From assembly GCF_000150275.1 (NCBI RefSeq), contig NW_002061118.1, positions 4,912 through 10,162 of the forward strand: a stretch of DNA of 5,251 nt, read 5' to 3'. Both the position numbers and the translations under genes were made by a program. Shown piece by piece: positions 616 through 5,251 of the stretch (positions are counted from its first letter, which is position 1; each line of letters opens with the position of its first letter). This DNA comes from Trichoplax adhaerens. Lineage: Eukaryota > Animalia > Placozoa. The notes beneath the pieces are model-generated. The model was given only the letters and a program-made list of their open reading frames with translations, was not told the origin of the DNA and ran no database searches.

Positions 616-928
616 CTTAAATTCATGCATACTATTATTTTTATTTGATGCCTAAATCAATAAAACAGACGACTAACTCGTTGGCTGTTTCGTACTTTAT
701 TGTACTACTTGCAAAGTACTCCTTGTTAATCAGTGCGTGTATTTAGCATATATATATGCAGTTGGATAGAGCTGTTTAGCCGAGTAGAGTTTTATATCAC
801 TTGTCCATCTCTTTTTATCCACTTGCTCCTGTTTGCAATAAGCAGCGCGCAGTCGGATTGATAGGATTAAATCGACGTCACAGTAAAATCATCAAGTTGT
901 TATTAGCCGATTATTAAAACATCCATTG

Positions 929-1554
929 GTAAGTGACCTATTCCGTTTGGGTATCCATCCTTATACGTTGTATTTCAAGTAAAAATAGAAATTAAAGATA
1001 GGTAAACGACGCCAACGAAACTATATTGCAAGCATTCTTTCTTATTTTGCACTATCATTGATGTGGTTAGCATTCATTTGCTGTTGTCTATTAGAATAAA
1101 ACGATTGTTGTTTGATGGTTATTATGATTATGAGTATAATGTATTTGTAAGCTGGAGTGCATTTTGTTAATGTACACGTCAATTAGTCTACTCTTTGGAT
1201 TTAGTTTGGCATTAGTTGATGTCAGCACACGATTGTCCGATAGCATTGTCTTCAGTAATCACCTACAGAGATTGATTGACTGATTTTCGGATAATCTTCC
1301 ATGCGGAATTGATAGCGACATTGTAGAAGTTGATTTATTGATGCTTGAAAATTGTGTATAATGGAATAATTAATGTTGTTCTGTTGAACTACGACTGGCA
1401 CGCAAGTACAACCATTCCGACATACCCTCATTAATTCATAGAGATAATATCGATCCGATGATTAGTAATTAATGGTTGCAACGAAGCTAGATTTGAATCT
1501 TATTTATCTCTAACCTGTCGTTCTAGTCTTTAACTAACATACTATTGAATTTAG
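929..1554 (+). other. Possible 5'-UTR intron (acceptor at 1526 or 1554)
   Basis: Donor TTG|GTAAGT at 928/929. Two candidate 3' sites, each with a CTAAC branch-like motif: CTAAC (1510-1514)...TTCTAG (1526) and ACTAAC (1533-1538)...TTTAG (1554), both just upstream of ATG 1566. Confidence 0.35.
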
Positions 1555-1565
1555 AGAAGAAAAAG

Positions 1566-3069
1566 ATGGCTGATGATGAATCTGTCTGTTCCACGAGTGT
1601 GCTTCCTCACCATACCGGTATACAATCACTGTACGAAAAGGGCAACTCATGCAAGACCGCCTTCCAGTTGGTGGACGGACTTTCTTGTTATACGCAAGCT
1701 GTCGATGAGATTGCTTCGTTGTCGAATCCTAGTGCAGATATTGATCGACTTGCATGCGATATTTATCTTGGTCTTTGCGACATTTACACTTTACAATATC
1801 AATTCATGAAAGCTGCTGAATGGAGTCAAAAAGGACAAACTGTGGCTACTAACCTGCGAGATGAAGTGAGCATGGCTCAATGTTTACAAAGAGAAAGCGA
1901 GATTAAGAGGTGCCAAGGGGATTACAACGGAGCACTGGAAGACGGTAAGAAATCGTTGGAAATGAAATTAAAATGGTTAGACGAAAAGGATGCTCGTCTT
2001 GCAGATAGTTATTATCAAATTGGGCGCGTCTACTTCGACTTGTGCAAGCTTGACTTATGTCGGACTATATCGGACAAGTCGCTGCAAATTCGATTGTCAG
2101 TCCTTGGTCACAATCATCCCGATGTTGCCAACTCCTATCACAACATAGGAGATGTCTATAGAAGCCTAGGCAAGTACGATCAGGCTCTGGGTATGTATAA
2201 CAAGTCACTGCAAATTAGATTGTCAATCCTTGGTCACAATCATCCTGATGTTGCCAACTCATATAACAACATAGGAGTTGTCTATGATCACCAAGGCAAG
2301 TCAGATCAGGCTCTGGATATATATGACAAGTCACTGCAAATTGGATTGGCAGTCTTAGGTCACAATCATCCCTATGTTGCGAAGTCATATAACAACATAG
2401 GAGTTGTCTATCATCGCCAAGGCAAGTACGATCAGGCTCTGGATATGTATCACAAGTCACTGCAAATTGGATTGTCAGTCCTTGGTCACAATCATCCCTA
2501 TGTTGCCAACTCATATAAAAACATAGGAGTTGTTTATAGAAACCAAGGCAAGAACGAGCAGGCTCTTAATATGTATGACAAGACGCTGCAAATTCGATTG
2601 TTAGTCCTTGGTCACAATCATCCCTATGTTGCGAAGACATATGATAAAATAGGAGTTGTCTATAGAAGCCAAGGCAAGTACGATCAGGCTGTGGATTTGC
2701 ATGACAAGTCATTGCAAATTCGATTGTCAGTCCTTGGTCACAATCATCCCGATGTCGCCAACTCATATAAAAATATAGCAGTTGTTTATCATTGCCAAGG
2801 CAAGTACGATCAGGCTGTGGATATGTATAAGAAGTCACTGTATATCGCAGCCTTAAACGGGAATGATCGCCTAGTTACAAGGATAAGAAAGAATATCGAA
2901 ATCACTCTCCAAAAGCAGAAATCAGTGATCCGTGATCTGTCGACATCAATAGCGAGAAATTTCATCAGAAGTATCGTTGAACTGTTTCAACCTAATCAAA
3001 CCAGCAATGTTACAGCGCCAGCAAATACTATCGACGGCAGTCAGAACAATCAACACATACAACAGAAAG
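1566..3069 (+). CDS. Coding exon A: tetratricopeptide-repeat region (42-aa kinesin-light-chain/nephrocystin-3-like TPRs) plus linker
   Basis: Repeats of the form LGHNHPxVAxSYxNIGxVYxxQGKYDQALxMYxKSLQI match the TPR pattern (Y4, I7, G8, Y11, G15, A20, Y24). About three degenerate TPRs lie at ~1749-2072. The ORF track's TTG start at 1545 is unlikely in a eukaryote. Confidence 0.9.
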
Positions 3070-5251
3070 GTAAGTGGAGTTTTAATACAGTAGTAGACGA
3101 GAGAGCGATGGATAACCGTAACCATATTCTGCATTTTGTTGTTCTACAGCTTTACAAGAAAAGAAATATTACAATGCATATAGCAAAGGCTTAAAACATG
3201 GTCATTGCTTTAATCATTTAATACGAGGCATGTTTATTGGCCCTCGCAATGTGGGCAAAACTTCTCTTCGAAAAATATTTACTCAGCAACGACTCAACAA
3301 TCCATCTCCGACACAAGTGGCTGAGAGTTTGGATATTATGGTAGACACTGAATATTATAATATTCATAACTCAGAGTGTTGTGATTGGACTGAAATACTG
3401 GACGATAAAGTCAAGACAGTCATACAACAGTTAGCTCAGCCAAGTATCGATCGTCAAGATAACATCAGTCAGCAAGTAACCGACATAGATCCAATAGATC
3501 AACCCGTTATAGCCAATAATCCACCTGTGTCAAATTGGCAACAACACAGTGTCGATTCTTCTGCAACTGATGTCATTACGCAAGATGTAGCGCTAGTAGG
3601 GAAAGAGATTCCAATAGAATCACAGTCTAAACGAGGCTTGCATCAATATTACTGTTCGTCCATGGAAAGTCAAAATGCAGACAAAGATGATAAAAATCAG
3701 TATGTTAAAATATGGGATTTCGCAGGTCATGCCGTCTATCATGTTTCTCATTATCCGTTTATCTCCGTTAATTGTATTTATATTTTAGTATTTAATATTA
3801 ATCAAGACATTAACGACAAGGTAAGAACAAGGAAGAACCAATCACTCAAAACGACGTATTTACAAGCTATGCAAGAATGGCTTACATCAATCATAGCTGG
3901 CCATACAAGCCAAAGTACCATCAATGTTAACATTAAAAGTGGAGATGAACAGCATTTACCACCTTCACAGCATTCATTACCTATTATTATTTTAGTAGCT
4001 TCTCATGGCGATTGTATTACCAATGAAGAAGATGGACGAACTCGATTCAATCAATTTGTGTCTACATTGACGTCTCGCATGCCTTCTTATGCCAGTCATA
4101 TCTATTCTTCTGGTATTATTTTTGATTGCAATCCTCTTGATAGTACTCCATCGACACAGAAGCTGCGTCAACAATGTTGTCTTCGTTTACATGGTATCAT
4201 TAAGGCATTTGTACAATCACTGCCATTTATTACGAATCCTATACCTATTCGATGGTATATCATGGCTACAATATTAAATAAATCGCTCCCTACTAACAAT
4301 CAACCCGCATCTTCTATTATGAATCAAATTAGACATTCTCAAGTGCATAATATTATGACAATGCAACAAATAGTAACCTTGTCTCAACAATACGGATTAT
4401 ATGAAAACCGTGATGAATTAATCGCTATGCTAATGTATCTACACGATTTAGGAGAAGTCATCTATTGTGATAAAGTAGGCGACGACGGAATTATTATAAC
4501 TAATGTCGATTGGTTGTTAAGTATATTTCGTTCCATTATTCAATTACAAGATTTTGTACAAGGAAGTGCACAAATAAAACGTGACTATGATATAGCAAGC
4601 CAAACAGGAAAATTATCAAGATCATACATTGATCATGCTATTTATAAATTTAATTTAGATGACAATAGTAAGCAAACTATATTGGCACTCATGCATGCTT
4701 ATGATATTCTATGTTCAATTACAAATGAGAAGAACGACAACGGCGAAGAATGTCAATACTTTGTTCCATACTTGTTACGATATGATGTTAAGCCATTCGA
4801 TTTATCAAAATATCATCAATCAGATTGGCTCTACATCGGATACGAGCATACAGATATTCCATATCTTCCAGATGGAATTTATTATTGCTTGTTATCTTCC
4901 TGTTTAAAGGAATGGAATAATACGGACGTAGAATTATACTATCAATGTGCCAAATATTATTTAGCAAATGACAATCACTATCTTGTAGTCAGGAAAGAGG
5001 AATCTCATATCGGTTTACAATATTGCTATCAGAAAATAAATGAGCTCAAGAGGAGTCAATCGATTATCGATAAAGTTAAAAATTCTATATTTGTCAAACG
5101 GCCTCACGAAATTGTCAAGAATAAACTCATCTCCACTGTCAATGATAGGATGGTTAAGTTTAAAGGGGCCGATTGTCGATATTTCGTCAAATGTAGTGAA
5201 TGTAATACACAAACAAGTATAACGAAGAATCAAGGAAGGAGATCAAAATGA
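1566..5251 (+). CDS. Spliced TPR-Roc-COR (ROCO family) GTPase, join(1566..3069,3150..5251), predicted 1201 aa
   Basis: ATG at 1566 in good Kozak context (AAGATGG). Removing the phase-1 intron 3070-3149 fuses the frames: ...HIQQK-A-LQEKKYYNAYSKGLKHGHCFNHLIRGMFIGPRNVGKTS, with no stop between 3150 and 3230. 1504+2102=3606 nt = 1202 codons, ending at TGA 5249-5251. TPRs are N-terminal and Roc G-motifs plus COR motifs are C-terminal. Confidence 0.85.
2073..2840 (+). repeat. Coding tandem repeat: six 126-bp units plus a 12-bp partial
   Basis: Units start at 2073, 2199, 2325, 2451, 2577 and 2703. GGTCACAATCATCC recurs at 2106, 2232, 2358, 2484, 2610 and 2736 (exact period 126, no indels). Hand counts give 18/126 differences for unit 1 vs 2 and 17/126 for unit 3 vs 4 (~86% identity). 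Confidence 0.97.
3070..3149 (+). other. Spliceosomal GT-AG intron, 80 nt, phase 1
   Basis: Consensus donor AAG|GTAAGT at 3069/3070. Pyrimidine-rich acceptor TTTTGTTGTTCTACAG|C at 3149/3150. Splicing restores a single reading frame between the two ORFs. Confidence 0.85.
3150..5251 (+). CDS. Coding exon B: Roc (Ras of complex proteins) GTPase domain followed by COR domain
   Basis: P-loop GPRNVGKTS (3239-3265); switch-I Thr candidate at 3311; WDFAGH (3713-3730) followed by YHVSHYPF and YILVFN; G4 IILVASHGD (SHGD 4001-4012). COR-like motifs: PIPIRW, LMYLHDLGEVIY, IITNVDWL, LMHAYDIL, YFVPYLL, LPDGIYYCLL. Confidence 0.9.

What the first reader, a model, noticed from the sequence alone, without database searches (positions are those of the whole stretch)
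1566..5251. Hypervariable-TPR sensor fused to a Roc-COR switch: candidate NLR-analogous animal immune/non-self receptor
Seen: one spliced gene joins a homogenised 42-aa TPR array to Roc-COR, with no LRR, kinase or death domain. Known: well-studied ROCO proteins (LRRK1/2, MFHAS1, DAPK1, Dictyostelium Rocos) use LRR, ankyrin, kinase or death modules. High-identity TPR/WD40 arrays with variable binding residues typify fungal NLRs (e.g. HET-E-type WD40 arrays), where they are linked to NACHT/NB-ARC ATPases. Brown algal LRR-ROCOs have been proposed as diversifying immune receptors. I recall TPR-bearing ROCO models in placozoans, so the architecture may already be catalogued, but I know of no assigned function. 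Inference: a rapidly diversifying ligand-sensing solenoid controls a dimerising GTPase, i.e. NLR-like logic with Roc-COR replacing the STAND ATPase.
Basis: partly seen in the sequence, partly recalled or inferred. Interest (0 to 1): 0.85.

Follow-up and report, generated by a model that had tools for sequence, protein, structure and literature searches.

The report
Truncated placozoan TPR-Roco GTPase gene
This is one incomplete copy of an already catalogued Trichoplax gene family in which a fast-diversifying TPR repeat array is joined to a Roc-COR GTPase switch and, in its sister copies, to a death domain; an immune-sensor role is plausible but untested.

Summary
The genome is Trichoplax adhaerens, and the window ends exactly at the end of a 10,162-bp scaffold.

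**Confirmed**
- One gene has a TPR exon (1566-3069) holding six 126-bp units.
- An 80-nt phase-1 intron lies at 3070-3149.
- A second exon encodes a Roc-COR GTPase. Evidence: Pfam, a profile search of solved structures, and an AlphaFold model matching LRRK1, LRRK2 and CtRoco.

**Not confirmed: "no death domain"**
- The last 30 bases lack three single bases relative to two near-identical paralogues, and that creates the final TGA.
- The paralogues run on through a zinc ribbon to a Death-domain exon.

**Hypervariability is real**
- I compared 36 repeat units from five young paralogues, which carry 4-11 units each.
- The five most variable columns are TPR positions 2, 5, 9, 12 and 13, the published ligand-binding face.
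- dN/dS is about 3 at those positions and 0.55 elsewhere.
- Unrelated Trichoplax TPR arrays show the same pattern more weakly.
- One H1/H2 orthologue pair has a nearly invariant array.

**Novelty**
- The family was catalogued by Civiero et al. 2014.
- The idea that Roc-COR can work like an NLR switch was published for bacteria by Kaur et al. 2021.
- This scan has already met the family on other DNA of this genome.
- An immune role remains untested.

The parts
729..1565 (+). Upstream region shared with paralogues. It probably holds the promoter, a 5'UTR exon (about 815-929) and a 5'UTR intron.
   Evidence: Nucleotide homology to paralogues L013, L014 and L021 begins at 729 (88-89% identity). 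In run X8 one contig lies on 815-901 and one joins 929 to 1561. That joint is not canonical as placed and rests on a single contig, so this part is tentative.
1566..3069 (+). Exon 1 coding part: all-TPR sensor module (501 codons plus the first base of a split codon).
   Evidence: Open frame from ATG 1566. Pfam TPR_12 1.8e-118, TPR_10 1.3e-74. Donor AAG|GTAAGT at 3070.
1566..2072 (+). N-terminal head of degenerate TPR-like helices (aa 1-169).
   Evidence: dN/dS 0.45-0.56 against paralogues. The same head occurs in front of large TPR arrays elsewhere in the genome that have no Roc-COR match nearby.
2073..2828 (+). Six tandem 126-bp (42-aa) TPR_10/TPR_12 units.
   Evidence: TRF period 126, 6.1 copies, 85% matches. 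Units listed. Variation peaks at TPR positions 2, 5, 9, 12 and 13, with dN/dS about 3 there.
2829..3069 (+). Degenerate capping unit and linker.
   Evidence: dN/dS 0.5-0.8.
3070..3149 (+). Intron: 80 nt, GT..AG, phase 1.
   Evidence: Best-scoring frame-compatible intron. Position and phase are conserved (80-95 nt) in paralogues L013-L018 and L021. It matches the junction of the Trichoplax sp. H2 model P0001. No RNA contig across this junction was seen.
3150..5251 (+). Exon 2: Roc-COR GTPase module, open to the scaffold end.
   Evidence: Pfam Roc and COR-A. Family profile against solved structures: MbRoco2 4.6e-33, LRRK2 4.9e-30, CtRoco 5e-29, LRRK1 3.2e-25. AlphaFold model pLDDT 87.4, pTM 0.89, with best Foldseek hits LRRK1, LRRK2 and CtRoco over about 700 columns.
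3239..3265 (+). G1 P-loop, GPRNVGKTS.
   Evidence: Conserved as GPxxVGK[ST] in nearly all of the 19 paralogues aligned.
3476..3607 (+). Disordered core of a roughly 130-aa insertion inside Roc.
   Evidence: pLDDT below 50 at exon-2 residues 109-152. The insertion has dN/dS 1.2-1.95 against three of four close paralogues.
3716..3730 (+). G3 motif, DFAGH.
   Evidence: Conserved as DFxG[HQ] in nearly all of the 19 paralogues. It aligns to the LRRK2 and MbRoco2 G3 motif.
4001..4012 (+). G4 motif, SHGD (Roc-type [ST]HxD).
   Evidence: Conserved across the 19 paralogues.
4316..4777 (+). COR-A.
   Evidence: Pfam PF16095, E 1.2e-10, exon-2 residues 389-542.
4778..5161 (+). COR-B-like region.
   Evidence: No Pfam hit. 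The model is confident here. Foldseek alignments to LRRK1 and CtRoco Roc-COR and the LRRK1 profile match extend through it.
5192..5203 (+). First CxxC (CSEC) of a zinc ribbon. The second CxxC lies beyond the scaffold end.
   Evidence: C681 is nearly invariant in alignment A2. Paralogues continue to a second CxxC.
5222..5251 (+). Unreliable scaffold end carrying a false stop codon.
   Evidence: Three single-base gaps relative to C1375:190.9k and C1375:206k, which are otherwise identical over the last 150 nt. A contig of run X1 also shows two inserted bases and runs on by 74 nt.

Best explanation
**What it is.** The window holds the first two coding exons of a Trichoplax adhaerens ROCO gene of the placozoan TPR-Roc-COR-zinc ribbon-Death family. 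The gene is cut off by the end of its scaffold.

**Shown.**
- The gene structure, the Roc-COR identity and the intact G1, G3 and G4 motifs.
- Membership of a young subclade whose TPR arrays differ in unit number.
- Nonsynonymous change in excess of synonymous change at the concave-face positions of the TPR units.
- Segment exchange between paralogues.

**Inferred mechanism.**
- The TPR superhelix binds a protein or peptide ligand on its concave face.
- Binding changes the nucleotide state, and with it the dimer or oligomer state, of Roc-COR, as in CtRoco and LRRK2.
- This clusters the C-terminal death-fold domain, which recruits death-fold partners for a cell-death or inflammatory-type output.

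**Biological setting.** The most likely setting is surveillance of foreign or altered-self proteins, meaning innate immunity or non-self recognition. I put that specific sub-claim at about 0.35. The general sensor-switch-adaptor mechanism I put at about 0.55.
For: **Identity**
- Pfam finds TPR_12, Roc and COR-A.
- A family profile hits MbRoco2, LRRK2, CtRoco and LRRK1 at E 1e-25 to 1e-33.
- A confident model (pLDDT 87.4) matches LRRK1, LRRK2 and CtRoco Roc-COR.
- G1, G3 and G4 are conserved across the 19 paralogues aligned.

**Splicing**
- The intron position and phase are conserved among paralogues with dS up to about 0.6-1.1.
- The Trichoplax sp. H2 gene model uses the same junction.
- A run recorded as RNA (X15) has contigs in both exons and none in positions 1-1584.

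**Death tail in the family**
- P0008, P0011, P0012 and P0028 carry a Death domain C-terminal of COR.
- Death exons lie downstream of both C1375 paralogues.

**Diversification**
- Unit numbers are 4, 6, 7, 8 and 11 in five paralogues.
- The top-5 entropy columns are TPR positions 12, 13, 2, 9 and 5, all within the published variable and ligand-contacting set (PMC1261162).
- Pooled dN/dS is 3.1 there against 0.55 elsewhere.
- Parsimony counts give 71 nonsynonymous and 5 synonymous changes at those codons. About 26 nonsynonymous changes would be expected at the synonymous rate.
- The whole array has dN/dS about 1, against 0.2-0.6 in Roc core and COR.

**Family dynamics**
- About 60 Roc-COR places, with clusters on C1404, C1392, C1372, C1389 and C1375.
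- Identity is mosaic. Against the C1375 paralogue L013, dS is 0.01 in COR and 0.14 in the TPR array.

**Concept**
- Bacterial Roc-COR ('AP-GTPase') proteins with rapidly evolving LRRs and variable effectors are described as conflict systems (PMC8195603).
Against: - No transcript across the 3069/3150 junction of this particular copy was seen.
- The 3' end of this copy is missing from the assembly, so its own tail is unknown.
- There are no data on ligand, GTPase activity, dimerisation, cell type or induction.
- The concave-face variability also occurs in large TPR arrays elsewhere in the genome with no Roc-COR match nearby (dN/dS 0.9-1.8 at the same positions). It is therefore a property of this TPR class in placozoans, not a mark of the ROCO genes alone.
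- The H1 and H2 orthologues of the C1375 paralogue have a 99.6% identical 7-unit array, so arrays are stably inherited over that distance.
- My selection tests ignore recombination between units. They use pairwise or parsimony counting, not a likelihood site model.
Confidence: 0.55

Rival explanations
1. The gene is an endogenous stress or cell-death regulator or scaffold, a kinase-less DAPK1-like protein, not a sensor of foreign molecules. The paralogues' different TPR surfaces would reflect subfunctionalisation towards different host partners such as chaperones, motors or death-fold adaptors.
For: - The domain order repeat-Roc-COR-Death is that of DAPK1, from established knowledge of its architecture.
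- The nearest non-placozoan hit with a Death tail is ANK-Roc-COR-Death from a hemichordate.
- The TPR type is the kinesin-light-chain / nephrocystin-3 type, which binds host cargo (Pfam TPR_NPHP3).
- The same variability pattern is seen in TPR arrays elsewhere in the genome.
- The orthologous array is nearly invariant between H1 and H2.
Against: - dN/dS about 3 at binding positions, changing unit number, large clustered copy number and segment exchange are more typical of conflict-driven families than of housekeeping regulators.
Confidence: 0.3
2. This particular copy is not a working gene. It is either a decaying duplicate or an assembly chimera on a small gap-ridden scaffold, with its 3' half collapsed from the C1375 paralogues.
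For: - Scaffold C1239 is only 10,162 bp, with 1,923 N upstream and a broken TPR-head fragment nearby.
- Exon-2 codons 301-665 are identical at protein level to the C1375 copy, with dS 0.01.
- The terminal 30 nt are unreliable.
- No annotated protein identical to this copy was returned.
Against: - Both exons are open throughout.
- The splice signals and all G motifs are intact.
- Contigs from independent runs in several studies match the copy-specific TPR array with no differences, for example 2105-2256, 2283-2412 and 2477-2599.
Confidence: 0.1
3. The two ORFs are separate genes: a TPR-only protein and a separate Roc-COR protein.
For: - No read-level junction was seen for this copy.
- An ATG at 3230 could in principle start a Roc-COR protein.
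Against: - Only 80 nt separate the two frames, with canonical signals and a compatible phase conserved across diverged paralogues.
- The conserved peptide upstream of ATG 3230 has no start codon of its own.
- Annotated H1 and H2 models join TPR to Roc-COR (P0001, P0019, P0028).
Confidence: 0.03

Closest known systems
Trichoplax ROCO gene expansion (Civiero et al. 2014, PMC4104024), e.g. TRIADDRAFT_62437 and Trichoplax sp. H2 RDD45494.1 'Nephrocystin-3'
   Same: Same family and architecture. Public models show TPR_12 array, Roc and COR-A, with a Death domain behind in RDD45494.1. The closest public protein, P0001 from lineage H2, is 94% identical over the Roc-COR exon.
   Different: No public protein identical to this copy was returned. 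This copy has its own 6-unit array, at most 82% identical in exon 1 to any H2 model found. The paper counts at least 17 genes, whereas I find about 60 places, about 33 of them near full length without stops.
DAPK1 (kinase-ankyrin-Roc-COR-Death)
   Same: The order repeat array, Roc, COR, Death domain. The Roc-COR fold.
   Different: No kinase or calmodulin module. TPR in place of ankyrin repeats. A zinc ribbon sits before the Death domain. The family is multi-copy and diversifying.
LRRK1/LRRK2 and prokaryotic Roco (Chlorobium tepidum Roco, Methanosarcina barkeri Roco2)
   Same: Roc-COR-A-COR-B core by profile (E 1e-25 to 1e-33) and by predicted fold. Roc-type G4 motif [ST]HxD.
   Different: No LRR, kinase or WD40. 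A roughly 130-aa, partly disordered insertion sits in Roc. Sequence identity is only 11-14%.
Bacterial AP-GTPase (Roc-COR) conflict systems (Kaur, Iyer, Burroughs, Aravind 2021, PMC8195603)
   Same: The logic: rapidly evolving N-terminal repeats, a Roc-COR switch, and a variable C-terminal effector or adaptor.
   Different: LRR rather than TPR. The effectors are enzymatic domains rather than a death-fold adaptor. Prokaryotic.
Brown-algal LRR-ROCO candidate immune receptors (Zambounis 2012; PMC11378527)
   Same: An expanded, clustered ROCO family with a diversifying repeat sensor, proposed as immune receptors and also untested.
   Different: There each LRR unit is a separate exon, shuffled and alternatively spliced. 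Here the whole TPR array lies in one exon and changes by unit gain, loss and point substitution.
Fungal NLRs with highly similar TPR/ANK/WD40 repeats, and placozoan NB-ARC-TPR proteins (Kamm 2019, PMC6321704)
   Same: Near-identical repeat scaffolds with variation focused on binding positions. For the fungal NLRs this rests on my own knowledge and was not checked here. The placozoan NB-ARC proteins also use TPR or WD40 with CARD or Death domains.
   Different: The switch is a Roc-COR GTPase, not a STAND ATPase. No NACHT or NB-ARC is present.

Membership tests
ROCO proteins | A Roc (Ras of complex) GTPase domain | tested here: met
   Pfam PF08477 E 2.2e-12. Profile against LRRK2 Roc and MbRoco2. 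G1, G3 and G4 present and conserved.
ROCO proteins | A COR domain directly C-terminal of Roc in the same polypeptide | tested here: met
   Pfam COR-A E 1.2e-10. The profile match to LRRK1 spans Roc through COR-B. The predicted fold aligns over about 700 columns with LRRK1, LRRK2 and CtRoco Roc-COR.
ROCO proteins | Guanine-nucleotide binding, and COR-mediated dimerisation | not testable with these tools
   Motifs only. No biochemical data and no complex prediction run.
Placozoan TPR-Roc-COR-Zn ribbon-Death subfamily | N-terminal 42-aa TPR_10/TPR_12 array in one exon, joined to Roc by a phase-1 intron | tested here: met
Placozoan TPR-Roc-COR-Zn ribbon-Death subfamily | C-terminal CxxC..CxxC zinc ribbon and a Death-domain exon | tested here: inconclusive
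   Only the first CxxC lies inside the window, and the scaffold ends there. Paralogues at least 98.5% identical over the last 1.1 kb have both features.
NLR / STAND NTPases | A central NACHT or NB-ARC ATPase | tested here: not met
   No such Pfam match in either exon. It can resemble an NLR only in how it works, not as a member.
DAPK1 orthologues | An N-terminal Ca/calmodulin-regulated kinase domain and ankyrin repeats | tested here: not met
   Exon 1 is TPR from the start codon onwards. No kinase or ANK match.
TPR (KLC / NPHP3-like 42-aa class) | Matches to TPR_10/TPR_12 with canonical TPR_1 anchor positions | tested here: met
   TPR_12 1.8e-118. TPR_1 aligns residues 279-308 to model positions 1-30, which fixes the numbering I used.

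The most novel reading that the evidence does not exclude
Placozoans run an intracellular receptor repertoire built on Roc-COR GTPases instead of, or beside, STAND ATPases. It would comprise dozens of clustered TPR-Roc-COR-Death or -CARD genes. Their TPR concave faces are under diversifying selection and their modules are exchanged by gene conversion. They would act as immune or allorecognition sensors that signal through death-fold assemblies. That would be an animal counterpart of bacterial AP-GTPase conflict systems and brown-algal LRR-ROCOs.
Probability: 0.3. Interest if true: 0.75.

Novelty: new member of a known kind. Interest (0 to 1): 0.4.

Why it matters
Why animals, slime moulds, brown algae and bacteria repeatedly expand ROCO GTPases is an open question, and the function of kinase-less ROCO proteins is largely unknown.

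This copy adds no new architecture. It does give a quantitative handle on the question:
- In a young placozoan subclade the TPR scaffold is nearly frozen.
- Exactly the known ligand-contacting positions change faster than synonymous sites.
- Unit number and the 3' modules are also in flux.

That makes a ligand-driven arms race, or partner diversification, testable in a very simple animal. It also warns annotators that the scaffold-end stop and the missing tail are assembly artefacts.

Tried and rejected
Rejected. It deletes a peptide conserved in all paralogues and lacks a pyrimidine tract.

2. **Read evidence for the exon junction.** Only contigs were available. X1 and X2 behave like DNA, covering the intron and the upstream region. 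X15 and X8 cover exons, but no contig bridges 3069/3150. Inconclusive.

3. **Using X1's overhanging contig to prove the ORF continues.** Weakened, because the 30-mer it runs on with occurs exactly in both C1375 paralogues, so the contig may come from them. The argument now rests on the three single-base gaps at the scaffold end.

4. **Looking for the missing 3' piece elsewhere in the assembly.** Only paralogues were found.

5. **Single-sequence search of solved structures.** Only weak hits, E 0.002-0.005. The family profile was needed.

6. **Pfam on the last 173 residues.** No family found. COR-B and the zinc ribbon are seen only through the model and the alignment.

7. **Strong intragenic homogenisation.** Only weakly supported. 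Unit identity is 0.873 within genes and 0.859 between genes (permutation p 0.0005), and the nearest unit is often in another gene.

8. **An H2 orthologue of this copy.** None found. P0001 is the orthologue of the C1375 paralogue's TPR exon.

9. **Steps not run.** I ran no complex prediction for COR dimerisation and no second structure job for the TPR exon. The tools return no coordinates, so neither would have mapped the variable positions.

10. **Joined (spliced) protein.** One script read across candidate junctions only to print 60-residue junction peptides for a phase check.
Full report
**Source.** The window is G000:C1239:4912-10162. The genome has 105.6 Mb in 1,414 contigs. A hit named TRIADDRAFT_63591 [Trichoplax adhaerens] lies on a contig of 13,260,704 bp, which is the length of C1414, so the organism is Trichoplax adhaerens. 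Scaffold C1239 is 10,162 bp long, so the window ends exactly at the scaffold end. The 4.9 kb upstream on the scaffold holds 1,923 N. It also holds a broken fragment resembling the TPR head of this family, 51% identical and interrupted by stops.

**The observation.**
- Two long + strand ORFs lie in different frames, 1545-3194 and 3230-5251.
- The first is all TPR (TPR_12 E 1.8e-118, TPR_10 1.3e-74).
- The second has Roc (2.2e-12) and COR-A (1.2e-10).
- Tandem Repeats Finder gives a 126-bp period, 6.1 copies, 85% matches at 2073-2840.
- In protein these are six clean 42-aa units from 2073 to 2828, preceded by a 169-aa head of degenerate TPR-like helices and followed by a degenerate cap.
- No LRR, kinase, NACHT or NB-ARC is present.

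**The intron.**
- The donor is AAG|GTAAGT at 3070.
- Two frame-compatible acceptors exist, at 3149 and at 3227.
- The right one is 3149 (TTTGTTGTTCTACAG|), giving an 80-nt phase-1 intron.
- With it, exon 2 begins with a peptide (..KYYNAY.K.L..G.C.N.LIRGMFIGPRNVGKTS) that is conserved in all 19 paralogues I aligned.
- The same donor/acceptor position and phase recur in paralogues L013-L018 and L021, with introns of 80-95 nt. Some of these paralogues have dS of 0.6-1.1 against the window.
- The Trichoplax sp. H2 gene model P0001 reads exactly across this junction.
- Read-level proof for this copy is lacking. All four runs laid were contigs.
  - X1 and X2 cover the intron and the upstream DNA and so behave like DNA.
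  - X15, recorded as RNA, has contigs in both exons and none in 1-1584.
  - No contig bridges 3069/3150.
- I sent no joined protein to any search or fold tool. The exons were searched apart by reference. One script read across candidate junctions only to print short junction peptides.

**The end of the window.**
- The apparent stop (TGA, 5249-5251) is not trustworthy.
- I aligned the last 150 nt to the two C1375 paralogues. The window is identical to the C1375:190.9k copy, and the C1375:206k copy adds only two substitutions.
- The exception is three single-base gaps in the window's final 30 nt, the last of which creates the TGA.
- A contig of run X1 shows two of these bases and runs on for 74 nt. 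Its continuation occurs exactly in both paralogues, so it may derive from them.
- In the paralogues the frame continues about 40 codons through a second CxxC, completing a zinc ribbon. After roughly 1 kb comes a Death-domain exon.
  - P0008 has COR-A at 21-174 and Death at 375-454, E 3.6e-10.
  - Exon matches to it were found by tblastn.
  - A different Death exon lies downstream of the C1375:190.5k gene, E 5.6e-10.
- Full-length public models show the whole architecture. RDD45494.1 (Trichoplax sp. H2, 1,247 aa) is TPR_12 x5, Roc, COR-A, then Death at 1161-1235.
- Hence 'no death domain' is a window-end artefact. This copy's own tail is simply unknown.

**Roc-COR identity.**
- A profile of 80 relatives hits MbRoco2 RocCOR (4.6e-33), LRRK2 Roc-COR (4.9e-30), C. 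tepidum Roco (5e-29) and LRRK1 (3.2e-25).
- An AlphaFold model of exon 2 is confident (pLDDT 87.4, pTM 0.89).
- Its only long disordered stretch is residues 109-152, inside a roughly 130-aa insertion between G1 and G3.
- Foldseek ranks LRRK1, LRRK2 and CtRoco first, with alignments of about 700 columns. That covers Roc, COR-A and COR-B.
- G1 (GPxxVGK[ST]), G3 (DFxG[HQ]) and G4 ([ST]HxD) are conserved in nearly all 19 paralogues, so nucleotide binding is plausible.

**Family size and dynamics.**
- The Roc-COR exon matches about 60 separate places in the genome. About 33 are near full length without stops (my count).
- Clusters lie on C1404 (902-970 kb), C1392, C1372, C1389, C1368 and C1375.
- Of the 20 best loci, 11 have a TPR exon directly upstream, separated by an intron at the same place.
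- Five genes form a young subclade: the window, C1375:190.5k, C1381, C1295 and C1404:938.6k.
- Their identity is mosaic. Against C1375:190.5k, exon-2 codons 301-665 have dN 0 and dS 0.01. Roc core has dS 0.04, the head 0.08 and the TPR array 0.14. Other paralogues show 95-98.5% blocks only at the 3' end.
- This points to recent gene conversion of the COR part. It also means that the contrast between a conserved Roc-COR and a divergent TPR array is partly produced by conversion.
- The H2 protein P0001 is 99.6% identical to the C1375 gene in the TPR exon, with the same 7 units, but only 94.9% identical in exon 2. So 3' parts have been exchanged since the H1 and H2 lineages split, while the array stayed put.

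**Is the TPR array hypervariable?**
- I took 36 full units from the five young genes, which carry 6, 7, 4, 11 and 8 units.
- The Pfam TPR_1 alignment fixes the numbering: column 19 of my register is TPR position 1.
- The five most variable columns are TPR positions 12, 13, 2, 9 and 5, at 2.25-1.80 bits.
- Magliery and Regan list positions 2, 5, 9, 12, 13, 33 and 34 as the most variable concave-face positions. They list 2, 5, 6, 9, 12 and 13 as the ligand contacts in HOP (PMC1261162).
- The chance that the top five of 42 columns all fall in that set of seven is 21/850,668, by my arithmetic.
- At these five codons pooled Nei-Gojobori dN/dS is 3.1 (dN 0.70, dS 0.22). At the other positions it is 0.55.
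- Parsimony counts on a FastTree tree give 71 nonsynonymous and 5 synonymous changes, a per-site ratio of 2.75 (binomial P 0.011). About 26 nonsynonymous changes would be expected at the whole-unit synonymous rate. The rest of the unit has a ratio of 0.69.
- Over the whole array dN/dS is about 1 (0.97, 1.09, 0.46, 1.08). Roc core and COR give 0.2-0.8 in nearly all comparisons.
- Caveats: recombination between units is ignored, and these are counting methods.

**Two results temper the claim.**
- 'Homogenised' is only weakly true within genes. Unit identity is 0.873 within genes and 0.859 between genes, and the nearest unit is often in another gene. More distant TPR-Roco paralogues have 3-8 degenerate units.
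- The pattern is not specific to ROCO genes.
  - The genome holds hundreds of arrays of this 42-aa type, with at least 205 matches from 719 candidates.
  - I examined four large arrays of 26-33 units at places with no Roc-COR match.
  - They have the same head and the same top-variable positions.
  - Their dN/dS at the five positions is 0.9-1.8, against 0.24-0.55 elsewhere.
  - The ROCO subclade is the most extreme case I measured, but it is a case of a general placozoan TPR-cassette behaviour.

**What is known.**
- Civiero et al. 2014 catalogued at least 17 Trichoplax ROCO genes with TPR, LRR, CARD, death, AAA and TIR domains. They speculated about chemotaxis and phagocytosis (PMC4104024).
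- A 2024 brown-alga ROCO paper repeats this (PMC11378527).
- The survey of placozoan immunity does not mention ROCO genes. It describes 42 NB-ARC/NACHT genes with TPR or WD40 repeats (PMC6321704).
- Kaur et al. 2021 describe bacterial Roc-COR ('AP-GTPase') proteins with rapidly evolving N-terminal LRRs and at least 24 alternative C-terminal domains as a conflict system (PMC8195603).
- All close relatives of this exon are placozoan. The first outside hits are an echinoderm Roc-COR-kinase-ZU5 protein and a hemichordate ANK-Roc-COR-Death protein.
- This scan has already reported the same family on other pieces of this genome, with the same verdict: real genes, a published family, an untested immune role.

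**Verdict.**
- This is a real but assembly-truncated member of a known family.
- The sensor-switch-adaptor reading is well founded as architecture. As a mechanism it is inferred. An immune or non-self role is plausible, at about 0.35, and untested.
- The contributions of this check are:
  - the corrected intron;
  - the false stop and the probable missing Death tail;
  - the quantitative evidence for diversifying selection on the TPR concave face;
  - the finding that this signature is shared by TPR arrays elsewhere in the genome.

Noticed in passing
L033:2495-2893 (= G000:C1239:2495-2893), upstream of the window on the same scaffold: A fragment 51% identical to residues 39-172 of the TPR head, interrupted by two stops, next to 1,923 N. 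Probably a relic of another family member.
   Followed up: partly
L039, L040, L041, L042 (C1413:6.72 Mb, C1398:1.07 Mb, C1405:1.82 Mb, C1410:8.22 Mb): Very long single open frames (1,266-1,675 aa) with 26-33 units of the same 42-aa TPR and the same N-terminal head as the Roco TPR exon. They show the same concave-face variability (dN/dS 0.9-1.8). What they are fused to was not examined.
   Followed up: partly
G000:C1339 and G000:C1360 (rows): TPR matches lie in open frames reported as 7,814 and 8,698 aa on small contigs. These are either giant TPR genes or unusually long stop-free stretches.
   Followed up: no
window 3476-3607 and the wider Roc insertion (about 3320-3700): A roughly 130-aa insertion between the P-loop and G3 of Roc. 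It is partly helical, with a disordered core (pLDDT below 50), and evolves at dN/dS 1.2-1.95 against three of four close paralogues. I found no counterpart in the LRRK or CtRoco alignments.
   Followed up: partly
P0001 (Trichoplax sp. H2) versus L013 (G000:C1375:190500-196500): The TPR exon is 99.6% identical between lineages H1 and H2, but the Roc-COR exon only 94.9%. The 3' part seems to have been replaced by conversion in one lineage after the split.
   Followed up: partly
L034:3743-4018 (-) and L035:8107-8370 (-), both on C1375: Two neighbouring paralogues with nearly identical COR regions carry different Death-domain exons. This agrees with earlier scan notes on swapped tails.
   Followed up: partly
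window 927-1561: In run X8 single contigs join 929 to 1561 and 927 to 1398. This may be a 5'UTR intron ending just before ATG 1566, but the ends as placed (TA..GA, GG..TG) are not canonical.
   Followed up: no
window 2215-2514 and 2566-2838, minus strand: ORFs of 99 and 90 aa antisense to the TPR array. They are themselves repetitive and look like by-products of the repeat, not genes.
   Followed up: no
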